Positions 14,191-29,577 of a DNA stretch of 64,000 nt are shown in pieces. The notes under the pieces were generated by a model, which searched no databases, was not told the DNA's origin, and saw nothing but the letters and a program-made list of their open reading frames with translations. Position 1 is the first letter of the stretch. Each line of letters starts with the position of its first letter. The position numbers were made by a program, and so were the translations under genes. This DNA is from Lytechinus pictus (lineage: Eukaryota): the NCBI RefSeq assembly GCF_037042905.1, contig NC_087247.1:26164001-26228000 (forward strand), given 5' to 3'.

Positions 14191-16788
14191 ATGGAAGTTG
14201 CAGACTACCAGTCAGCCTTTGAAGATTACCTGCGCAACAAGGAGACCTTCAAGTGCTCCAAGAAAGAAATGGATTCCTTCCTGCTAACTCTACCCATTAC
14301 TAAAGAGATCAGGAATCATTTGAAGAAAACCACTTTGGAAAATCCTCCTACAACTCTTGAGGTTCTTGGCCAGACAGTATCTCTTTCCAGTAGCTATATC
14401 AAGGGTATAAAAGCAATACAGAACATTCTGAAGAAAGACAAGAGTGAGAATATAAAGTTGAGCTGTATCATCCAGCGTATTCGTGACTTGATGGGCAGTA
14501 CCCATAACAAGCTGGTTTGGGAGATTTCAACGATTCTTGACATTTCAGGTGAAAAGAAGGTTTCTCTAGGGATTTGTAAGAAGAAGCAACGCTTATGTGA
14601 TGCAAAAGTGAAGATGCATCATTATCTCCTGATGGAAGGATTGCAAGATGTTATTGCCAGTCTTACAGAAAATGGACCAAATTCTGTAGAGGAACTGTGG
14701 AAATCTTGTAAAAGCTCATCTGCTCCACTTGCTATGTCAAAAGTGGGCATGAGTCACAGAAGATTTGAGGCGACACTGATGAGCTATCCTGAAGCTTTCC
14801 AAGTTGAAGATGGTAAAATGTTCTTAAATGAAAACCCGCAAATCACATACTCTGTGATCCTTAGCCATATGCAGTCAGGTAAACTTAAGCTCAGAGATCA
14901 CCTGTATAACCAAGGTGCACTTCTGAAGAATGAGCTGTTCCATTCAGCCCCACATCTCCTTAATAGAGCAGAAATGCTTGCAATGGGAGAAGGCATGGAA
15001 ATGTTCAACTTTACTCTGCAGTCGCTGAGTAATGACTTTCTTATCATAATTCCTCACATGCTAGTTGTTGTCAAAGGAACATCCCAGATACAGGACAACC
15101 CCTTTGTAAGTGCCATCTCCAAGATCAAAGGTTTCATCAGAATTGCCCAAGGTTCATCTCAAGCTCAGAATAATCCTTTGGTGAGTGCGGTGTCCAGGTT
15201 CAAAGATTTTGTCAGAGGCAAAAATACTGGAGACATCCCTACAATGAGTCAACTTTTGGTATTCGTCAATGATACACTGAATCCGAGAGAGCAAGCAGCT
15301 GTTGGAAGCACTAGCCACAAGCTCAGAGAAACAATCACTGCATATCCAGACCACTTTGCCGTGAATAATGACAGGGTGTTTGTCAAGTCGGATGATGTCA
15401 TTCTTCCAGATATGAATTCAAAAGTTGCACATAATACTTCAGTTACCATAGAAGATCAAGCAGGTGATAGAAATGGATGTTTGCCAGATCAGTGCACTGA
15501 ATCCTCTGAAGCTCTGGCACACTCTAATGCTCTTGATCAAGAAATAGAGTCACTTCAAATTGGTATTGATGTTAGTAGCTCTGTTCTAAGTACTGAAGAT
15601 TCTGAATTGTCCCCAAACTCTGATGATTCTAGTCTGGATGCTGGTTCTCTTGGCACAGAAAATGTATGTACACTATGTACAAGCACTTTAAGCAGCTCCA
15701 TCCACAACACTGAAAAACCAGGATGCTCAGAAAACTTAGGTTCTGTTGATGATCATGAAACAAATTTGCCACATTCAGATAACATAGAATGCAGCTCAGT
15801 GCAGTATGCTGAAGATAGTAGAGACACTCCTGATCGAGACCATGGTTCACTGATCACGGATGATGCTGTATCTAGCACTGGACAACTGGAAGGCACATCA
15901 AACTCTGATGCCCTTGATCAGAAGACAGGATCACCTTGCACTGATGATGGTGTTTATAGCTCTGTTCAAAATGTTGAACTTCCTGAAGACTCGGCAGACT
16001 CTGACCTGTGTGATCAAGAAACTGATTCATCCCATACTAATAATGAGGCATGTACATGTAGCTCTGTCCAAAACGTGGAACTCCCTGGCGGCATGCAAGT
16101 CTCTGAAACTTCTGATGGAGATACTGATTTGTTGTGCAATGATGATAGTTTTCATACTCAGATCACAGACCAACGTGAAGACTCTGTAAACTCTGCCTCT
16201 CTTGATAAAGAAAAACATGTTCCAGAAAATGATAATGATGTCTCCAACTCTATTCAGTCCACTGGTCAGTCTTCTGCAGACCTCAGACCCTCAGACCTTG
16301 TTGATCATGGCCCAGCATCACCTAGAAGAGGTAACAATCAATGTAGCACTGATCATATCACTGGCCATCCTCTAAACTTGGTAAATTCCAATGGCAATAA
16401 AGACTTACCATGCCCCAGCAATGATGTAAGTAGCTTTGTTAAAAAGACTGAATGTTCTGATGATGTCCCAAACTTGGACACTCTTGATATTGACACTGAT
16501 GTAACATACTCTGCTCATGATATTGCACGCTACTCTCAGAAGACCAAAGATTTTGAAGATTTCTCATTTTCAAATAAGAGATCTTCACTTCAGACCATTA
16601 ATGACGAACTTGATGGTAGCTTGGATCAGTCTATGTCTTTAGGGCAAGATGAAGTTGAATCTCTTGGGAGTGACATCATATCAGACTCCGAGTCTCTTCA
16701 TTCTGGGATGAGTAATGAAATAGGGAACCTGGAACCAGCTAGTGCACCTGCAGAAACAGAAGGTCAGGATACAGTTACTGTTCTTCAG
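14191..16788 (+). CDS. Gene B first coding exon: winged-helix-like repeats (aa ~1-400) and acidic Ser/Asp-rich repeat region
   Basis: 869 aa ORF preceded by the acceptor cttattcacag (exon start 14142) and ending at the donor cag/gtgagc (16788). Recurrent G-x-S/T-x3-L/F-x3-L-x2-YP-x2-F-x-V pattern. Confidence 0.9.
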
Positions 16789-28700: not shown

Positions 28701-29577
28701 GGACGCTTTATCCGACAAGTCCAATTTTATCCGACAGTTACCATAGTAACAGTGCCTCTCAGCCAATCAGACTCAAGGAAAGATGTCAGATCTGACAACT
28801 TGTCGGATAAAAATGTTGATGAAACGCCCCCCTGGTTTACATGTATGTCAAAATGGTACCTGATTTTTTCTTACTGCTGAATATTTCCTTTATGATCTTA
28901 GCAAGATTTTGTTTGTAACGTTTTAAAAACATAACTTAATTCATTAAATGATACAGTTAACGGCAGTTCTTTTGTCAAGTTGTATGTGAACCAACATAAA
29001 TACCATTTGCTTAATTATCAAAAGTCTTTCAGAATTAATAACAAATGGCAGATAACCTTATTTTGGTAATATTGCATATGCATAGATTCCAGGCCGGGGT
29101 TCACAGTCGGACATGATAAAGGAAGTAGTGCGGAACCACAGCCCTCTGACCCTTGTCATTGATGAAGTCGCGACTGAAGCGGATGCTGCAGCGGTCCTTG
29201 CCACCAGACAGAGGGGTATCCAAGTGATTGCTGCAGTACCTGGACAGACCCTCCAGGATGTCATCCTCAACCCCAATCTGAAGCACCTCTCTGGAGCAAT
29301 TCAGAACATGGTCTTTGGCCATCCCGGTCAGCAGGTTGTCGCAGGACGCACTGCGATGCAGAGGACACAGCCAGCAGCCTTTGACATCCTGGTGGAAATG
29401 TATGATCGATACCGCTGGATTGTGCATACGGACTTCACTCGAGCCATTGACCTCTGCCTTCAGAGAGTACCAGTTGGTGTCCAGGAGAGAAGAGTGTTCA
29501 TGAAAAAAATATCAGAAGATACCAAAGGAGTTCCTCAAGTGGTAGTGAAAAACCTTGTGGTTACCTATCCCCTATAG
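14191..29577 (+). CDS. Gene B: ~1634 aa multidomain protein with Egalitarian-like winged-helix repeats, acidic repeat linker, degenerate DEDDy/EXD1-like exonuclease and Ycf45/SpoIIIAA-family AAA ATPase
   Basis: Eleven GT-AG coding exons with compatible phases: 14191-16788, 17175-17393, 17820-17897, 18271-18494, 19230-19581, 20781-21074, 25524-25735, 26451-26606, 27847-28069, 28521-28577 and 29086-29577. Total 4905 nt, open throughout. Motifs include SILK/[73 protein letters not shown] and NHSPLTLVIDE. Confidence 0.88.
17175..18494 (+). CDS. Gene B exons 2-4: degenerate DEDDy (EXD1/Egalitarian-type) 3'-5' exonuclease-like domain
   Basis: FLTSGSILKVVFG...[17 protein letters not shown]...LPESLNFFG...YLYQKM parallels the EXD1/Egl pattern LE....ILKVIHD...G..L.NVFDTQVA...L..LL......LY..L. 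Confidence 0.65.
19705..20422 (+). mobile_element. Second HINE/DINE-1-like family element
   Basis: 5' ttatacccccgcc...gggggtata hairpin, (gtcg)n microsatellite, four ~155-160 bp internal repeats, and a 3' ggggtattaatcaccttcagtgatatttctagtt end. Confidence 0.7.
21453..24930 (-). mobile_element. CR1/L2-group LINE with an intact ORF2, antisense in intron 6 of gene B
   Basis: Contains the 1036 aa EN-RT ORF. Its 3' UTR has a (TG)n tract, a stem-loop, AATAAA and an (ATTGA)n tail at 21453-21505. No ORF1 is visible. Confidence 0.9.
21737..24847 (-). CDS. LINE ORF2: APE endonuclease plus reverse transcriptase
   Basis: HFNSRSL, SETW, GGGVA, MGDYN, IDNIF, TDHLP; NYRPI, QYGFR, FLDLSKAFD, GVPQGSILGPLLF, LFADDTN, KFLG. 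Confidence 0.95.
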   Translation of the reverse strand: MDILQYIFPFNEVNDEEFKCIFSEVQYDTVDNDNFDMFSTYIDSDESGILDDIDPDNNFFTFDKPVKYWLPIDFNDNSDFTTDDKHNFSILHFNSRSLNKNYFAIDQFLNQIKLKFSIYGFSETWINENIPLLFNRDNYTFYHDRQGRKGGGVALLVNNSLNVKVREDISLPETICESLFIEIISDSSKNIIVGIIYRNPNKPILEFNENFNSCLGTISTENKSIFLMGDYNVDLLKYNTCQHINDFVNIMYNNSLRPLIDKPTRICKRSVTLIDNIFTNVVDKDIHSGVFYSGITDHLPIFQITNLSIKLYKEPTSLFYVKLTDPSSLSSFKKDLATLEWNEVFSACDVDNAYNSFINLFKTTYKHNFAPRKIKRKNTPRKPWVTPSLLKCINKRHRLYKIFCKKRNNISENKYKHYRNKLNSILQSARKTYFSDLLQKNRNKMSKTWEVINNLLGKKRKCQYPSYFFKEERKLTDPQSIVNEFNLYFSSIAVKLKSQHIKNPKCHFSSFLKVPCNNSIFFHPTNESEVLNIVKCINSSKSQDFEGLTQYTIKHVIHFIVKPIVHICNLSFLSGKVPMNFKVGKIIPIFKKGDPHIFSNYRPITLLPCFSKILEKLIYNRVFNHINKYNLLDDSQYGFRKQSSCAHALIDLHDYTQNKLTNKVHTLGLFLDLSKAFDVINHDILLCKLQFFGIRGVALQWFKNYLSNRFHFTCYNNFVSDRKRIQCGVPQGSILGPLLFLIYINDLSSSSSFFRFILFADDTNLIACHKDFNRLILQVNRELENVIQWFDANELIINNDKTCVLYFNRKSHPYNCKDIRILINHVNLNVCTSVKFLGIILDDTLSFQDHRQYIANKISKNIGILRKLRISLPQNVLLMLYNCLILPYLYYCTITWAAVGKTKLESLYKLQKKALRICTNSHFQAHSRPLFFRLQTLTIYDIYTFQIAIMMFNVNNSIAPKIICQMFTLNKSIHSHNTRSCIKYHYPKVSSQSLLNSLRHNGPRIWNNLPNNFMSCTTLSSFKVLLKRQLVSSYSL
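25057..25396. mobile_element. Probable MITE with a 17 bp subterminal hairpin
   Basis: ttaggcccaatatacac ... gtgtatctccggcctaa ends, and a perfect inverted repeat at 25326-25342 / 25370-25386. Confidence 0.45.
25524..29577 (+). CDS. Gene B exons 7-11: Ycf45/SpoIIIAA-family P-loop ATPase domain
   Basis: Colinear Ycf45 motifs: [14 protein letters not shown]..I.NR...IGLT, Walker A [9 protein letters not shown] (27968-27994), [25 protein letters not shown], NH.P...IDE (Walker B 29152-29166), QRGIQ, NP.L..L.G.I and F...VEM. Confidence 0.92.
26705..27034. mobile_element. Foldback-type palindromic element
   Basis: The arm accatatgttggtagaacataatgaaaacccc...aaatttggtgggaatcggtccatggggg is mirrored by ccccatggaccgattcccaccaaattt...gggggtttttcatcatgttctaccaaaatatggt. 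Confidence 0.75.
28675..28831. mobile_element. Short MITE, a well-preserved member of the ~150 bp family
   Basis: gggagcgttttatgaa ... ttgatgaaacgccccc flanked by ctg on both sides. Internal tccgaca repeats. Confidence 0.7.

What the first reader, a model, noticed from the sequence alone, without database searches (positions are those of the whole stretch)
14191..29577. Egalitarian/EXD1-like RNA-binding pseudo-nuclease fused to a Ycf45/SpoIIIAA ATPase in one animal gene
Seen: 11 GT-AG exons splice phase-correctly into one ~1634 aa frame. The order is N-terminal repeats, acidic linker, exonuclease-like block, Ser/Thr-rich linker, and P-loop ATPase with Walker A [9 protein letters not shown] and Walker B LVIDE. 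Established: winged-helix repeats plus a DEDDy exonuclease-like domain is the architecture of Drosophila Egalitarian (an mRNA-dynein adaptor), and EXD1 is a piRNA-pathway pseudo-nuclease. Ycf45 (COG3854/SpoIIIAA-like) is an ATPase of unknown function, typical of plastids, cyanobacteria and plants and often coupled to an R3H nucleic-acid-binding domain. Inference: this is an ATP-driven RNP-binding or remodelling protein, plausibly acting in germline, small-RNA or defence pathways, with Egl-type modules in place of R3H. I know of no characterised protein with this three-part architecture.
Basis: partly seen in the sequence, partly recalled or inferred. Interest (0 to 1): 0.92.

Follow-up and report, generated by a model that had tools for sequence, protein, structure and literature searches.

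The report
Sea-urchin Egl-like protein fused to ATPase
This is a real, expressed sea-urchin gene whose single 1634-residue protein joins RNA-adaptor modules of the Egalitarian type (winged helices plus a dead exonuclease-like domain) to a bacterial/plastid-type Ycf45 ATPase, a combination nobody has studied that also occurs, with a live nuclease, in many diatoms and water moulds.

Summary
Eleven GT-AG exons (14191-29577, + strand) splice into one 1634-aa frame. It is colinear with Lytechinus pictus XP_054751864.1.

Stranded RNA-seq reads cross 21074>25524 (87 reads) and 25735>26451. Loose ends tie exon 5 to exon 6 and exon 8 to exon 9. One 7.2-kb transcript contig is long enough to hold the whole CDS.

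**Domains**
- Pfam WH_Egal matches twice.
- The exonuclease-like block matches real DEDDy domains profile-to-profile (91%, E 1e-6). All five catalytic positions are replaced.
- The C-terminus is a Ycf45/Spore_III_AA ATPase. Its model (pLDDT 90) has the PilT/VirB11 fold.

**New here**
- The architecture is conserved in five echinoid species.
- A second, head-to-head paralog carries the same exonuclease-like and ATPase parts and is older than the Diadema/Lytechinus split. An earlier scan note (s1-323392) had flagged its Egl-like half.
- Exonuclease + Ycf45 fusions, some with a LOTUS domain, are widespread in stramenopiles, so the architecture is not unique.
- The urchin ATPase has lost about 40% of the family's near-invariant residues.

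Function is untested. My best guess is an RNA/RNP-binding adaptor whose ATPase end forms a ring and acts as a nucleotide switch or slow remodeller. No paper describing it turned up.

The parts
14191..16788 (+). Exon 1 (aa 1-866): start codon, winged-helix region and acidic linker
   Evidence: One open frame of 875 codons with a GT donor at 16789. RNA contig sets hold all of its sampled words.
14650..14832 (+). Egl-type winged helix 1 (aa 154-214)
   Evidence: Pfam PF23713 WH_Egal: whole-protein E 2.2e-10, 41 bits against a cut-off of 27. As a lone segment it scores E 8.6e-7.
15199..15390 (+). Egl-type winged helix 2 (aa 337-400). A possible third, unscored repeat lies between the two (aa ~225-295).
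   Evidence: PF23713, E 4.3e-4 on the lone segment, below the cut-off on its own. The middle repeat is suggested by eye only and has no Pfam hit.
15481..16788 (+). Acidic, Ser/Thr-rich linker (aa 431-866)
   Evidence: D+E 20.4%, K+R 4.1%, S+T 24.5%. Length varies widely among orthologs.
17175..17393 (+). Exon 2: first half of the exonuclease-like domain (position of ExoI; Asp>Ser890, Glu>Phe892)
   Evidence: Splice sites.
17820..17897 (+). Exon 3: position of ExoII (Asp>Leu946) and the 'VFDLQ' motif
   Evidence: The same 'ILK|intron' border is found in paralog B and in contig L001.
18271..18494 (+). Exon 4: rest of the exonuclease-like domain (position of ExoIII; Tyr>Lys, Asp>Thr)
19230..19581 (+). 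Exon 5: end of the exonuclease-like domain and the Ser/Thr-rich linker
   Evidence: Its last 30 nt are read as loose ends joined to exon 6 in 88 RNA reads.
20781..21074 (+). Exon 6: linker, plus the conserved KV[IL]HY..G.P motif that forms a beta-hairpin of the ATPase module (from 21015)
   Evidence: RNA joint to exon 7. The motif is invariant in five echinoids. The hairpin has pLDDT 83-86.
21737..24847 (-). Non-LTR retrotransposon ORF (1036 aa, reverse transcriptase) inside intron 6. It is not part of the gene product.
   Evidence: ORF. Pfam RVT_1, E 3.6e-36. The 4449-nt intron is spliced out.
25524..25735 (+). Exon 7: N-terminal domain of the Ycf45 module
   Evidence: RNA joints on both sides. 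Homology to Ycf45 N-termini.
26451..26606 (+). Exon 8: N-terminal domain, with the degenerate 'DNRAG' and 'TLHR' motifs
27847..28069 (+). Exon 9: Walker A [9 protein letters not shown] at 27968-27994
   Evidence: Its first 30 nt are read as loose ends joined to exon 8.
28521..28577 (+). Exon 10: [17 protein letters not shown] motif
   Evidence: Paralog B has an exon of the same 57 nt.
29086..29577 (+). Exon 11: Walker B LVIDE at 29152-29166, the 'AVPG' position of the family's conserved 'AHG', and the stop at 29575-29577
   Evidence: The acceptor at 29086 was chosen by homology and colinearity with P0001. An in-phase alternative at 29107 is not excluded.
2229..5999 (-). 5' half of head-to-head paralog B. 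Exon 1' lies within 5999-4977, with exonuclease-like exons at 4469-4197, ~3620-3540 and 2483-2229. Its five ATPase exons lie outside the window, 8.3-13.3 kb before its first base.
   Evidence: tblastn E 1.7e-8 and 1e-4 to the exonuclease-like block. The ATPase exons are in G000:C3:26150700-26155700 and include exon lengths 156, 223 and 57 nt identical to gene A. No RNA evidence was obtained for it.

Best explanation
The stretch is a genuine, transcribed Lytechinus gene encoding one 1634-aa protein. It has at least two Egl-type (LOTUS-like) winged helices and a long acidic disordered linker. Next comes a DEDDy-exonuclease-like domain in which all five catalytic positions are replaced, then a Ser/Thr-rich linker. 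The C-terminus is a two-domain Ycf45/Spore_III_AA P-loop ATPase of the PilT/VirB11 structural class, without the R3H tail of its bacterial relatives. It is one of two ancient head-to-head paralogs and is conserved in echinoids. How it works (inferred, not shown): the winged helices and the dead nuclease domain bind structured RNA or an RNA-helicase partner, as in Egl, EXD1 and LOTUS proteins. The ATPase end assembles into a ring, as its structural relatives do, gathering several RNA-binding arms. ATP binding, and at most slow hydrolysis, would switch assembly or remodel the bound RNP. I put about 0.9 on the gene, the fusion and the domain assignments, and about 0.35 on the mechanism.
For: Gene and fusion: splice model, RNA junctions and full-length contig, colinear database protein. 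Winged helices: PF23713, E 2e-10; nearest Atlas cluster is the Egalitarian WH family, a lead only at 0.85. Exonuclease-like domain: hhalign against 116 PF01612-type domains gives Prob 91%, E 1e-6 over 128-171 columns in register, while shuffled and reversed controls score 15 or less against 45. The top PDB profile hit is Egalitarian 9uju_C, in register but at E 0.36. The nearest Atlas cluster is 'Exd1 homolog' at 0.92, and 59 of 100 hits carry PF01612. ATPase: PF19568 at 35.7 bits against a cut-off of 27, and 40-44% identity, E ~1e-64, to bacterial R3H-Ycf45 proteins. The AF2 model has pLDDT 90 and pTM 0.88. Foldseek finds PilT, PilU, VirB11, FlaI, CpaF and DotB, with an archaeal RuvB-like Holliday-junction helicase on top, E 1e-13 to 1e-9. 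Constraint: the ATPase module is the best conserved part (51% Lytechinus-Diadema against 30-35% for the other domains). Only 2 of 399 residues differ from P0001, against 31 of 866 in the N-terminal half. Age: five echinoid orthologs. Paralog B has identical exon lengths and branches outside all A-type sequences with 99/95 support.
Against: There is no functional data of any kind. The AF2 model of the exonuclease-like block failed (pLDDT 37), so its fold rests on profile similarity alone. The urchin ATPases keep only 65-68 of the 107 columns that are at least 90% conserved in 89 other family members, all of which keep 91 or more. They lack the conserved His ('AHG' becomes 'VPG' or 'ARG') and the 'DNRAG' motif. 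Diadema also has Walker B Asp-Arg instead of Asp-Glu. A true motor is therefore doubtful. No XAD-like helical domain, BicD-binding region or dynein-light-chain TQT motif was found, so the Egl transport mechanism cannot simply be transferred. RNA versus DNA as ligand is undecided.
Confidence: 0.6

Rival explanations
1. Origin rival A, an ancient machine. The urchin genes descend from the same ancestral LOTUS/WH-exonuclease-Ycf45 gene as the stramenopile and cryptophyte fusions. Most animals lost it, or lost only the ATPase, which would leave Egl/EXD1-like proteins.
For: The same three modules occur in the same order. The urchin exonuclease-like profile matches the protists' exonuclease domain at E 1e-6. 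Both groups lack the R3H tail. A tree holding urchin and protist fusions together is not rejected (delta lnL 0.74, p-AU 0.41).
Against: The free ML tree does not join them. The urchin ATPase shares 0 of 18 signature residues and none of the indels of the sampled protist fusions. It shows the bacterial state at 11 of the 18 and its own residue at the other 7. It is 40-44% identical to bacteria but only 29-35% to the fusions. No intermediate animal or opisthokont member was found.
Confidence: 0.4
2. Origin rival B, independent assembly. A bacterial or plastid-type Ycf45 gene entered the echinoid (or an older deuterostome) lineage, lost its R3H tail, gained introns and fused to a resident Egl/EXD1-like gene. 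This would converge on the protist architecture.
For: The closest non-urchin relatives by identity and E-value are Cyanobacteria, Chloroflexota and Acidobacteriota. There is weak attachment to a Chloroflexota/Acidobacteriota group (84/90). No other animal homolog appeared in the searches. WH_Egal genes without a detected ATPase exist in the same genome.
Against: Slowly evolving bacterial sequences attract any long branch, and shared ancestral states are not evidence of kinship. Four spliceosomal introns in the ATPase part and a whole-gene duplication older than the Diadema split show long residence. Convergence on the same three-module order would be a coincidence. The database searches had a blind spot for proteins of 664-899 aa and scored only the 8000 candidates sharing most words.
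Confidence: 0.4
3. Function rival: the ATPase end is a pseudo-enzyme that serves only as an oligomerisation or docking scaffold, with no nucleotide-driven step.
For: About 40% of near-invariant family positions are lost, including the conserved His. Diadema has lost the Walker B Glu and has an Arg inside Walker A.
Against: The Walker A Lys and Walker B Asp are invariant in all urchin sequences, and Lytechinus and Strongylocentrotus keep Asp-Glu. The module is the most strongly conserved part of the protein. Paralog B keeps GPSGVGKT, IIDE and the His.
Confidence: 0.3
4. Function rival: it acts on DNA (branched or single-stranded) rather than RNA.
For: The best structural match is an archaeal RuvB-like Holliday-junction helicase of the PilT class. 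Sources name bacterial relatives as single-stranded nucleic-acid or ssDNA-binding R3H proteins. DEDDy domains act on DNA as well as RNA.
Against: The N-terminal modules are of the Egl/LOTUS type, and their characterised members bind RNA or RNA helicases (PMC13186709). Structural rank among PilT-class hits is not specific (E 1e-13 against 1e-10, TM 0.40-0.47 for most hits).
Confidence: 0.15
5. Artefact rival: two neighbouring genes were wrongly merged by gene prediction or read-through.
For: Exon 6 contains an in-frame Met, and the 4.4-kb intron holds a retrotransposon.
Against: There are 87 spliced reads across 21074>25524. Another 88 reads join exon 5 to exon 6. No cluster of molecule starts was seen in the stretch. 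Transcript contigs of 4.3 and 7.2 kb span the junctions. The fusion is conserved in five species and in paralog B.
Confidence: 0.03

Closest known systems
Drosophila Egalitarian (Egl), mRNA adaptor for BicD-dynein
   Same: N-terminal winged helices of the Egl/LOTUS-like type (Pfam WH_Egal), followed after a flexible linker by a 3'-5' exonuclease homology domain. Egl is the top PDB hit of the urchin exonuclease-like profile. Egl's catalytic residues are dispensable for RNA binding.
   Different: Egl keeps all five DEDDy residues, and here all five are replaced. Egl has an exonuclease-adjacent helical domain, a BicD-binding N-terminus and a dynein-light-chain motif, none of which was detected here. 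Egl has no ATPase.
EXD1 (piRNA-pathway partner with an inactive exonuclease-like domain)
   Same: Catalytically dead DEDDy-like domain used for binding. The nearest language-model cluster is 'Exd1 homolog' (0.92).
   Different: EXD1 is a small protein without WH_Egal repeats and without an ATPase. Its partners (TDRD12/PIWI) were not examined. Sequence similarity is below significance.
Ycf45 / COG3854 R3H-domain ATPases of cyanobacteria, Chloroflexota, plastids and plants (Pfam Spore_III_AA)
   Same: Same two-domain ATPase core, 40-44% identity, E ~1e-64. Walker A, the GDGD-PHP-ARR block and the NH motif are kept.
   Different: No C-terminal PTPase-like (PF25516) or R3H (PF01424) domains. About 40% of near-invariant positions have changed. 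It sits at the end of a 1634-aa animal protein and is interrupted by four introns. The family itself has no established function and no solved structure by sequence search.
Unnamed protist family: (OST-HTH/LOTUS)-DNA_pol_A_exo1-Spore_III_AA proteins of diatoms, oomycetes and cryptophytes (e.g. Nitzschia, Seminavis, Saprolegnia, Phytophthora, Rhodomonas)
   Same: The same module order, the same loss of the R3H tail, and exonuclease domains related at profile level.
   Different: The protist exonuclease keeps the DxE, HD..D and Y...D motifs. Their ATPase clade has its own residues and indels that the urchin proteins lack. They are also uncharacterised.
PilT/VirB11/FlaI/CpaF secretion-type hexameric ATPases and the archaeal PilT-class Holliday-junction helicase (PDB 5f4h)
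   Same: Closest solved folds to the modelled ATPase module (Foldseek E 1e-13 to 1e-9). This suggests ring assembly.
   Different: Only 11-16% sequence identity and TM 0.27-0.47. There are no membrane-machine partners here. The hexameric state is inferred, not tested.

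Membership tests
Egalitarian (Egl) orthologs | Egl-type winged-helix domains (Pfam PF23713) | tested here: met
   E 2.2e-10, 41.3 bits against a cut-off of 27, in two stretches.
Egalitarian (Egl) orthologs | 3'-5' exonuclease homology domain | tested here: met
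   Profile-profile match of 91%, E 1e-6 to PF01612-type domains, with controls. Egl is the top PDB hit but at E 0.36. The structure model failed.
Egalitarian (Egl) orthologs | Conserved DEDDy catalytic residues (kept in Egl according to bioRxiv 10.1101/2025.08.03.668247) | tested here: not met
   Ser, Phe, Leu, Lys and Thr occupy the five aligned positions.
Egalitarian (Egl) orthologs | Dynein-light-chain TQT motif and BicD-binding N-terminus | tested here: not met
   No TQT motif in the protein. BicD binding cannot be tested with these tools.
Egalitarian (Egl) orthologs | Exonuclease-adjacent helical domain (XAD/EHD) | tested here: inconclusive
   The sequence after the exonuclease-like block is a 30% Ser/Thr linker. 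There is no model of adequate confidence.
EXD1 | Inactive exonuclease-like domain | tested here: met
EXD1 | Short protein with an N-terminal Lsm-like domain, partner of TDRD12 (from my own knowledge) | not tested
   No such domain was reported by Pfam. The architecture differs: 1634 aa, with WH repeats and an ATPase.
Ycf45 / Spore_III_AA (PF19568, COG3854) | Family HMM above the curated cut-off | tested here: met
   35.7 bits against 27. E ~1e-64 to family members.
Ycf45 / Spore_III_AA (PF19568, COG3854) | Walker A GxxxxGK[ST] and Walker B hhhhDE | tested here: met
   GNPGVGKST and LVIDE in the window. In Diadema, Walker B is VDR.
Ycf45 / Spore_III_AA (PF19568, COG3854) | Near-invariant 'DNRAG', 'R.GR' and 'AHG' (His) motifs | tested here: not met
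   Only 65-68 of 107 conserved columns are kept. His is replaced by Pro (Lytechinus, Strongylocentrotus) or Arg (Diadema).
Ycf45 / Spore_III_AA (PF19568, COG3854) | C-terminal PTPase-like (PF25516) plus R3H (PF01424) tail, present in most bacterial and plant members | tested here: not met
   Neither domain is found, and the protein ends about 35 aa after the core.
Ycf45 / Spore_III_AA (PF19568, COG3854) | Two-domain PilT/VirB11-class fold | tested here: met
   AF2 pLDDT 90. Foldseek E 1e-13 to 1e-9.
Protist LOTUS-exonuclease-Ycf45 fusions | Module order: winged helix, then exonuclease, then Ycf45 ATPase, with no R3H | tested here: met
Protist LOTUS-exonuclease-Ycf45 fusions | ATPase belongs to the fusion clade | tested here: inconclusive
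   They are not joined in the ML tree, but the joint clade is not rejected (p-AU 0.41). 0 of 18 signature residues are shared.
Protist LOTUS-exonuclease-Ycf45 fusions | Intact DEDDy motifs | tested here: not met

The most novel reading that the evidence does not exclude
Winged-helix + exonuclease adaptors of the Egl/EXD1 kind would be the stripped-down remains of an old eukaryotic machine, LOTUS-exonuclease-Ycf45 ring ATPase. That machine is still intact in stramenopiles. Among sampled animals it survives only in sea urchins, as two 200+-million-year-old paralogs. If so, the genetically tractable urchin L. pictus offers the first experimental entry to what Ycf45 ATPases do, namely nucleotide-controlled assembly or remodelling of RNA-protein particles.
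Probability: 0.25. Interest if true: 0.8.

Novelty: new variant of a known kind. Interest (0 to 1): 0.6.

Why it matters
Ycf45 is a widespread ATPase family (cyanobacteria, plastids, plants, many bacteria). My searches found no established function for it and no solved structure by sequence.

Egl, EXD1 and LOTUS proteins are central to mRNA transport and germline small-RNA pathways, but none is known to carry its own NTPase. A protein that physically couples the two predicts that Ycf45-type ATPases work on nucleic-acid-protein particles. It also offers a testable animal model, because L. pictus can be genetically manipulated.

The same coupling recurs in hundreds of stramenopile proteins with a live nuclease. 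This points to a sizeable family that my literature searches did not find described.

The result also bears on gene origin. An ATPase 40-44% identical to bacterial proteins sits, with introns, inside an old duplicated animal gene. Whether this reflects deep ancestry or transfer plus convergent fusion is open and can be decided by sampling.

Tried and rejected
- **AF2 of the exonuclease-like block.** With a 6-sequence alignment it gave pLDDT 37 and is unusable, so no fold search was run on it.
- **Direct sequence searches for that block were weak.** Pfam gave PF01612 in only 1 of 6 members at E 0.13. hhalign against a shallow 9-sequence profile gave 0.9%. Only the deeper 116-sequence profile was significant.
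- **Own-genome family searches (PF19568, PF23713) returned nothing.** They missed even this locus, because exons are scored separately against 812 Mb, so they are uninformative. One protein search failed as busy and was repeated.
- **Failed look-ups.** The look-up of encoding contigs had no record for P0008. P0003 found nothing in the own genome.
- **PDB by sequence.** No relative of the ATPase or of the N-terminus was found.
- **Rfam.** No RNA family in the window.
- **Literature.** Nothing on this gene, on animal Ycf45, or on exonuclease-Ycf45 fusions. The only Ycf45 mention relevant to this question lists it among cyanobacterial-ancestry genes of oomycetes and Naegleria (PMC3087521).
- **ATPase phylogeny.** It could not decide between one and two origins of the fusion.
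- **Merged-genes artefact.** Considered and rejected on the RNA evidence.
- **Complex prediction.** Not used, because six copies of the module exceed its size limit.
- **Coverage gap.** My protein-database searches did not cover proteins of 664-899 aa carrying an urchin-like ATPase. This may be why paralog B's product did not appear.

Full report

Yes. Working from the raw window, I listed stop-free segments and splice sites. I then assembled eleven exons with AG/GT borders and consistent phases: 14191-16788, 17175-17393, 17820-17897, 18271-18494, 19230-19581, 20781-21074, 25524-25735, 26451-26606, 27847-28069, 28521-28577 and 29086-29577. Together they give a 4905-nt CDS and 1634 residues.

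An exhaustive HMMER search with the first 430 residues found a 1634-aa database protein, P0001. One search identified it as Lytechinus pictus XP_054751864.1. It is colinear with my model, with 36 substitutions and no gap. The window is therefore Lytechinus, either L. pictus or a very close relative.

**2. Is it one mRNA?**

I laid two raw stranded RNA-seq runs and two contig sets of the same organism on 20650-26649.

It has GT..AG ends.
- Joint 25735>26451 is crossed by 17+38 reads.
- Loose ends at the exon-6 acceptor read the last 30 nt of exon 5 (36+52 reads).
- Loose ends after exon 8 read the first 30 nt of exon 9 (22+49 reads).
- All first mates lie on the minus strand, as expected for a + strand RNA in a stranded library.
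- One contig of 7161 nt carries exon 6 at positions 3677-3970. That equals 205 nt of leader plus exactly the 3471 nt of exons 1-5. A further 2820 nt follow exon 8, which is 772 nt of CDS plus about 2 kb of 3' UTR.
- No cluster of molecule starts was seen inside the stretch.

The merged-genes artefact is therefore rejected. Junctions between exons 1-5 and 9-11 were not read directly.

**3. What are the parts?**

*N-terminus.* Pfam WH_Egal (PF23713) matches at E 2e-10, at aa 154-214 and aa 337-400. A repeat-like stretch between them has no score. The 2026 Egl-BicD structure paper describes these 'Egl domains' as winged helix-turn-helix folds that closely resemble LOTUS domains (PMC13186709).

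*Linkers.* Residues 431-866 are acidic (20% D+E). Residues 1046-1235 are 30% Ser/Thr. Both vary greatly in length between species.

*Exonuclease-like block (aa 867-1045, exons 2 to 5).* Direct searches were weak:
- Egalitarian 9uju_C was the top PDB hit of a 6-sequence profile, but at E 0.36.
- PF01612 matched only one member, at E 0.13.
- The AF2 model failed with pLDDT 37.

Stronger evidence came from a profile of 116 true DEDDy domains, taken from protist proteins found. hhalign gave probability 91%, E 1e-6 and score 45 over 128-171 columns. The motifs aligned in register: ILSVSLF with VAIDCEG, ILKVVFG with TKLFHD, and VFDLQ with LDTQL. Twenty column shuffles scored 5.6 or less, apart from one single-column artefact, and the reversed profile scored 15.

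The language-model search put the block next to 'Exd1 homolog', with 59 of 100 hits carrying PF01612.

By the hhalign alignment, all five catalytic positions are replaced (Ser890, Phe892, Leu946, then Lys and Thr). I accept 'exonuclease-like and catalytically dead', on profile evidence rather than on structure. Egl itself keeps its DEDDy residues, so the better analogy for the dead site is EXD1.

*C-terminus (aa 1236-1634).* Pfam Spore_III_AA scores above its cut-off. The best non-urchin relatives are R3H-domain Ycf45 ATPases of Cyanobacteria, Chloroflexota and Acidobacteriota, at 40-44% identity and E ~1e-64.

With a 95-sequence alignment, AF2 gave pLDDT 90 and pTM 0.88. A conserved hairpin encoded by the end of exon 6 packs into the module. 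Foldseek places it in the PilT/PilU/VirB11/FlaI/CpaF/DotB class of ring ATPases. An archaeal PilT-class Holliday-junction helicase is the top hit. No relative has a solved structure by sequence. The PTPase-like and R3H domains that end most bacterial members are absent.

**4. How intact is the ATPase?**

Of 107 alignment columns that are at least 90% conserved in 89 bacterial, algal and stramenopile members, each of those proteins keeps 91 or more. The urchin proteins keep only 65-68.

Lost positions include the 'DNRAG' motif, an 'R.GR' motif, and the His of 'AHG' (Pro in Lytechinus and Strongylocentrotus, Arg in Diadema). In Diadema the Walker B Glu is also lost (VDR), and an Arg sits inside Walker A.

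The Walker A Lys and Walker B Asp are invariant, however. The module is also the best conserved part of the protein. It is 51% identical between Lytechinus and Diadema, against 30-35% for the winged helices and exonuclease-like block. Only 2 of 399 residues differ between the window and P0001, against 31 of 866 in the N-terminal half. This looks like a constrained but re-purposed NTPase: a nucleotide switch or slow enzyme rather than a fast motor. That reading is inference.

**5. Distribution and age**

- The same WH_Egal + Spore_III_AA architecture is annotated in L. variegatus, S. purpuratus (LOC579939 and a second locus), Diadema setosum and D. antillarum.
- A metagenome contig (L001, protein P0003) encodes many WH_Egal repeats and the start of the exonuclease-like block. 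It ends at a canonical donor right after '..LK', the same intron position as in the window. Its organism is unknown.
- No other named animal appeared. My searches were word-filtered and did not cover proteins of 664-899 aa.

**6. A second fused gene, head to head**

I confirmed its exonuclease-like exons at 4469-4197, about 3620-3540 and 2483-2229, which are 34-36% identical to gene A.

An own-genome search then showed that it continues beyond the window's start into five Ycf45 exons at G000:C3:26150700-26155700. With the intron phases of gene A imposed, they assemble without stops. Three of the exon lengths (156, 223, 57 nt) are identical to gene A's. The product keeps GPSGVGKT, IIDE and the His.

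In the ATPase tree, paralog B is sister to all A-type urchin sequences including Diadema (99/95), within a 100/100 urchin clade. The whole fused gene was therefore duplicated, in inverted orientation, before those lineages split. I have no RNA evidence for B.

**7. The architecture elsewhere**

P0008 is an unnamed 1006-aa protein carrying OST-HTH/LOTUS (weak), DNA_pol_A_exo1 (E 3e-16, with intact DxE, HD..D and Y...D motifs) and Spore_III_AA. Searching with it returned over a hundred strong matches (all 120 listed at E below 1e-135; 4203 proteins at E <= 0.001). Most of those listed carry PF01612 + PF19568, and some also carry PF12872.

They come from diatoms (Nitzschia, Seminavis, Pseudo-nitzschia, Cylindrotheca, Epithemia), oomycetes (Saprolegnia, Phytophthora, Aphanomyces, Achlya), Rhodomonas and many environmental contigs. 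The three-part design is therefore a family trait in protists, and my literature searches found no description of it.

**8. One origin or two?**

This is undecided.

For one origin:
- The same modules occur in the same order.
- Both groups have lost the R3H tail.
- The exonuclease domains are related at profile level.
- The AU test does not reject a joint clade (p 0.41).

Against one origin:
- The free tree attaches both groups separately, as long branches, to a short-branched bacterial grade.
- The urchin ATPase shares 0 of 18 residues and none of the indels that mark the sampled protist fusions.

The states shared with bacteria are ancestral, so they do not prove a bacterial donor.

**9. Mechanism I commit to**

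The protein is an RNA/RNP-binding adaptor. Its winged helices and dead nuclease domain would do the binding, as shown for Egl and reported for EXD1 and LOTUS proteins. They are tethered by long disordered linkers to a PilT-class NTPase end that assembles into a ring. This would gather several binding arms, with ATP binding or slow hydrolysis controlling assembly or remodelling.

What is shown: the gene, the fusion, the domains, the degenerate sites and the conservation. What is inferred: RNA as ligand, ring formation and nucleotide control. I give the mechanism about 0.35.

**10. Verdict**

I rate it a new variant of known kinds: an undescribed fusion family rather than a new principle. It is annotated only as 'uncharacterized protein' in public records. 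Interest is moderate to high.

Noticed in passing
window 2229-5999 (minus strand), continuing to G000:C3:26150700-26155700, i.e. 8.3-13.3 kb before the window's first base: Head-to-head paralog B of the whole fused gene. It has a weak WH_Egal, an exonuclease-like domain (34-36% identity) and a Ycf45 ATPase whose exons include lengths of 156, 223 and 57 nt identical to gene A. It keeps Walker A, Walker B and the family's His, and it branches outside all A-type urchin sequences.
   Followed up: partly
window 21737-24847 (minus strand), in intron 6: Uninterrupted 1036-aa ORF of a non-LTR retrotransposon (Pfam RVT_1, E 4e-36). Related copies appear in the RNA contig sets at 95-99% identity.
   Followed up: partly
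window 21327-21367: A 41-nt piece inside intron 6 sits in short RNA-run contigs of very high depth (about 500-900, against 17-170 for the exons). It is probably part of an abundant repeat or small RNA found elsewhere in the genome. There is no Rfam match.
   Followed up: no
window 25250-25400: Reads with the first mate on the + strand, the opposite sense to the gene, lie just upstream of exon 7. They show a 70-74-nt skip (25276/25280>25351) and loose ends on both sides, so this looks like a transcribed repeat or an antisense RNA.
   Followed up: no
window 20821 and 25556: Exonic differences in the RNA runs. A/G at 20821 is seen in about half of the reads (heterozygous in both animals). C>A at 25556 is seen in all reads of both raw-read RNA runs (third base of an Ile codon). 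Both are consistent with the high polymorphism of sea urchins.
   Followed up: no
L015:8162-10000 with L016:1-894 (G000:C3:19304162-19306894, + strand), 6.86 Mb before the window: A third gene of the same genome has a 911-aa exon rich in WH_Egal-like modules (Pfam E 1e-8; 24% identity to P0003 and P0001 at E ~1e-4). No exonuclease-like or ATPase exon was detected in the 20 kb fetched.
   Followed up: partly
L001:656-4411 (metagenome contig ERZ27293330): P0003, from an unknown eukaryote. One exon carries four or more WH_Egal repeats (E 1e-35) and the start of the exonuclease-like block. It ends at a GTAAGT donor right after '..VLK', the same intron position as in both urchin paralogs.
   Followed up: partly
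orthologs P0002, P0006, P0010 (Diadema): Diadema copies have Walker B Asp-Arg in place of Asp-Glu and GQPRSGKT in Walker A. This suggests that hydrolysis is dispensable in that lineage.
   Followed up: partly
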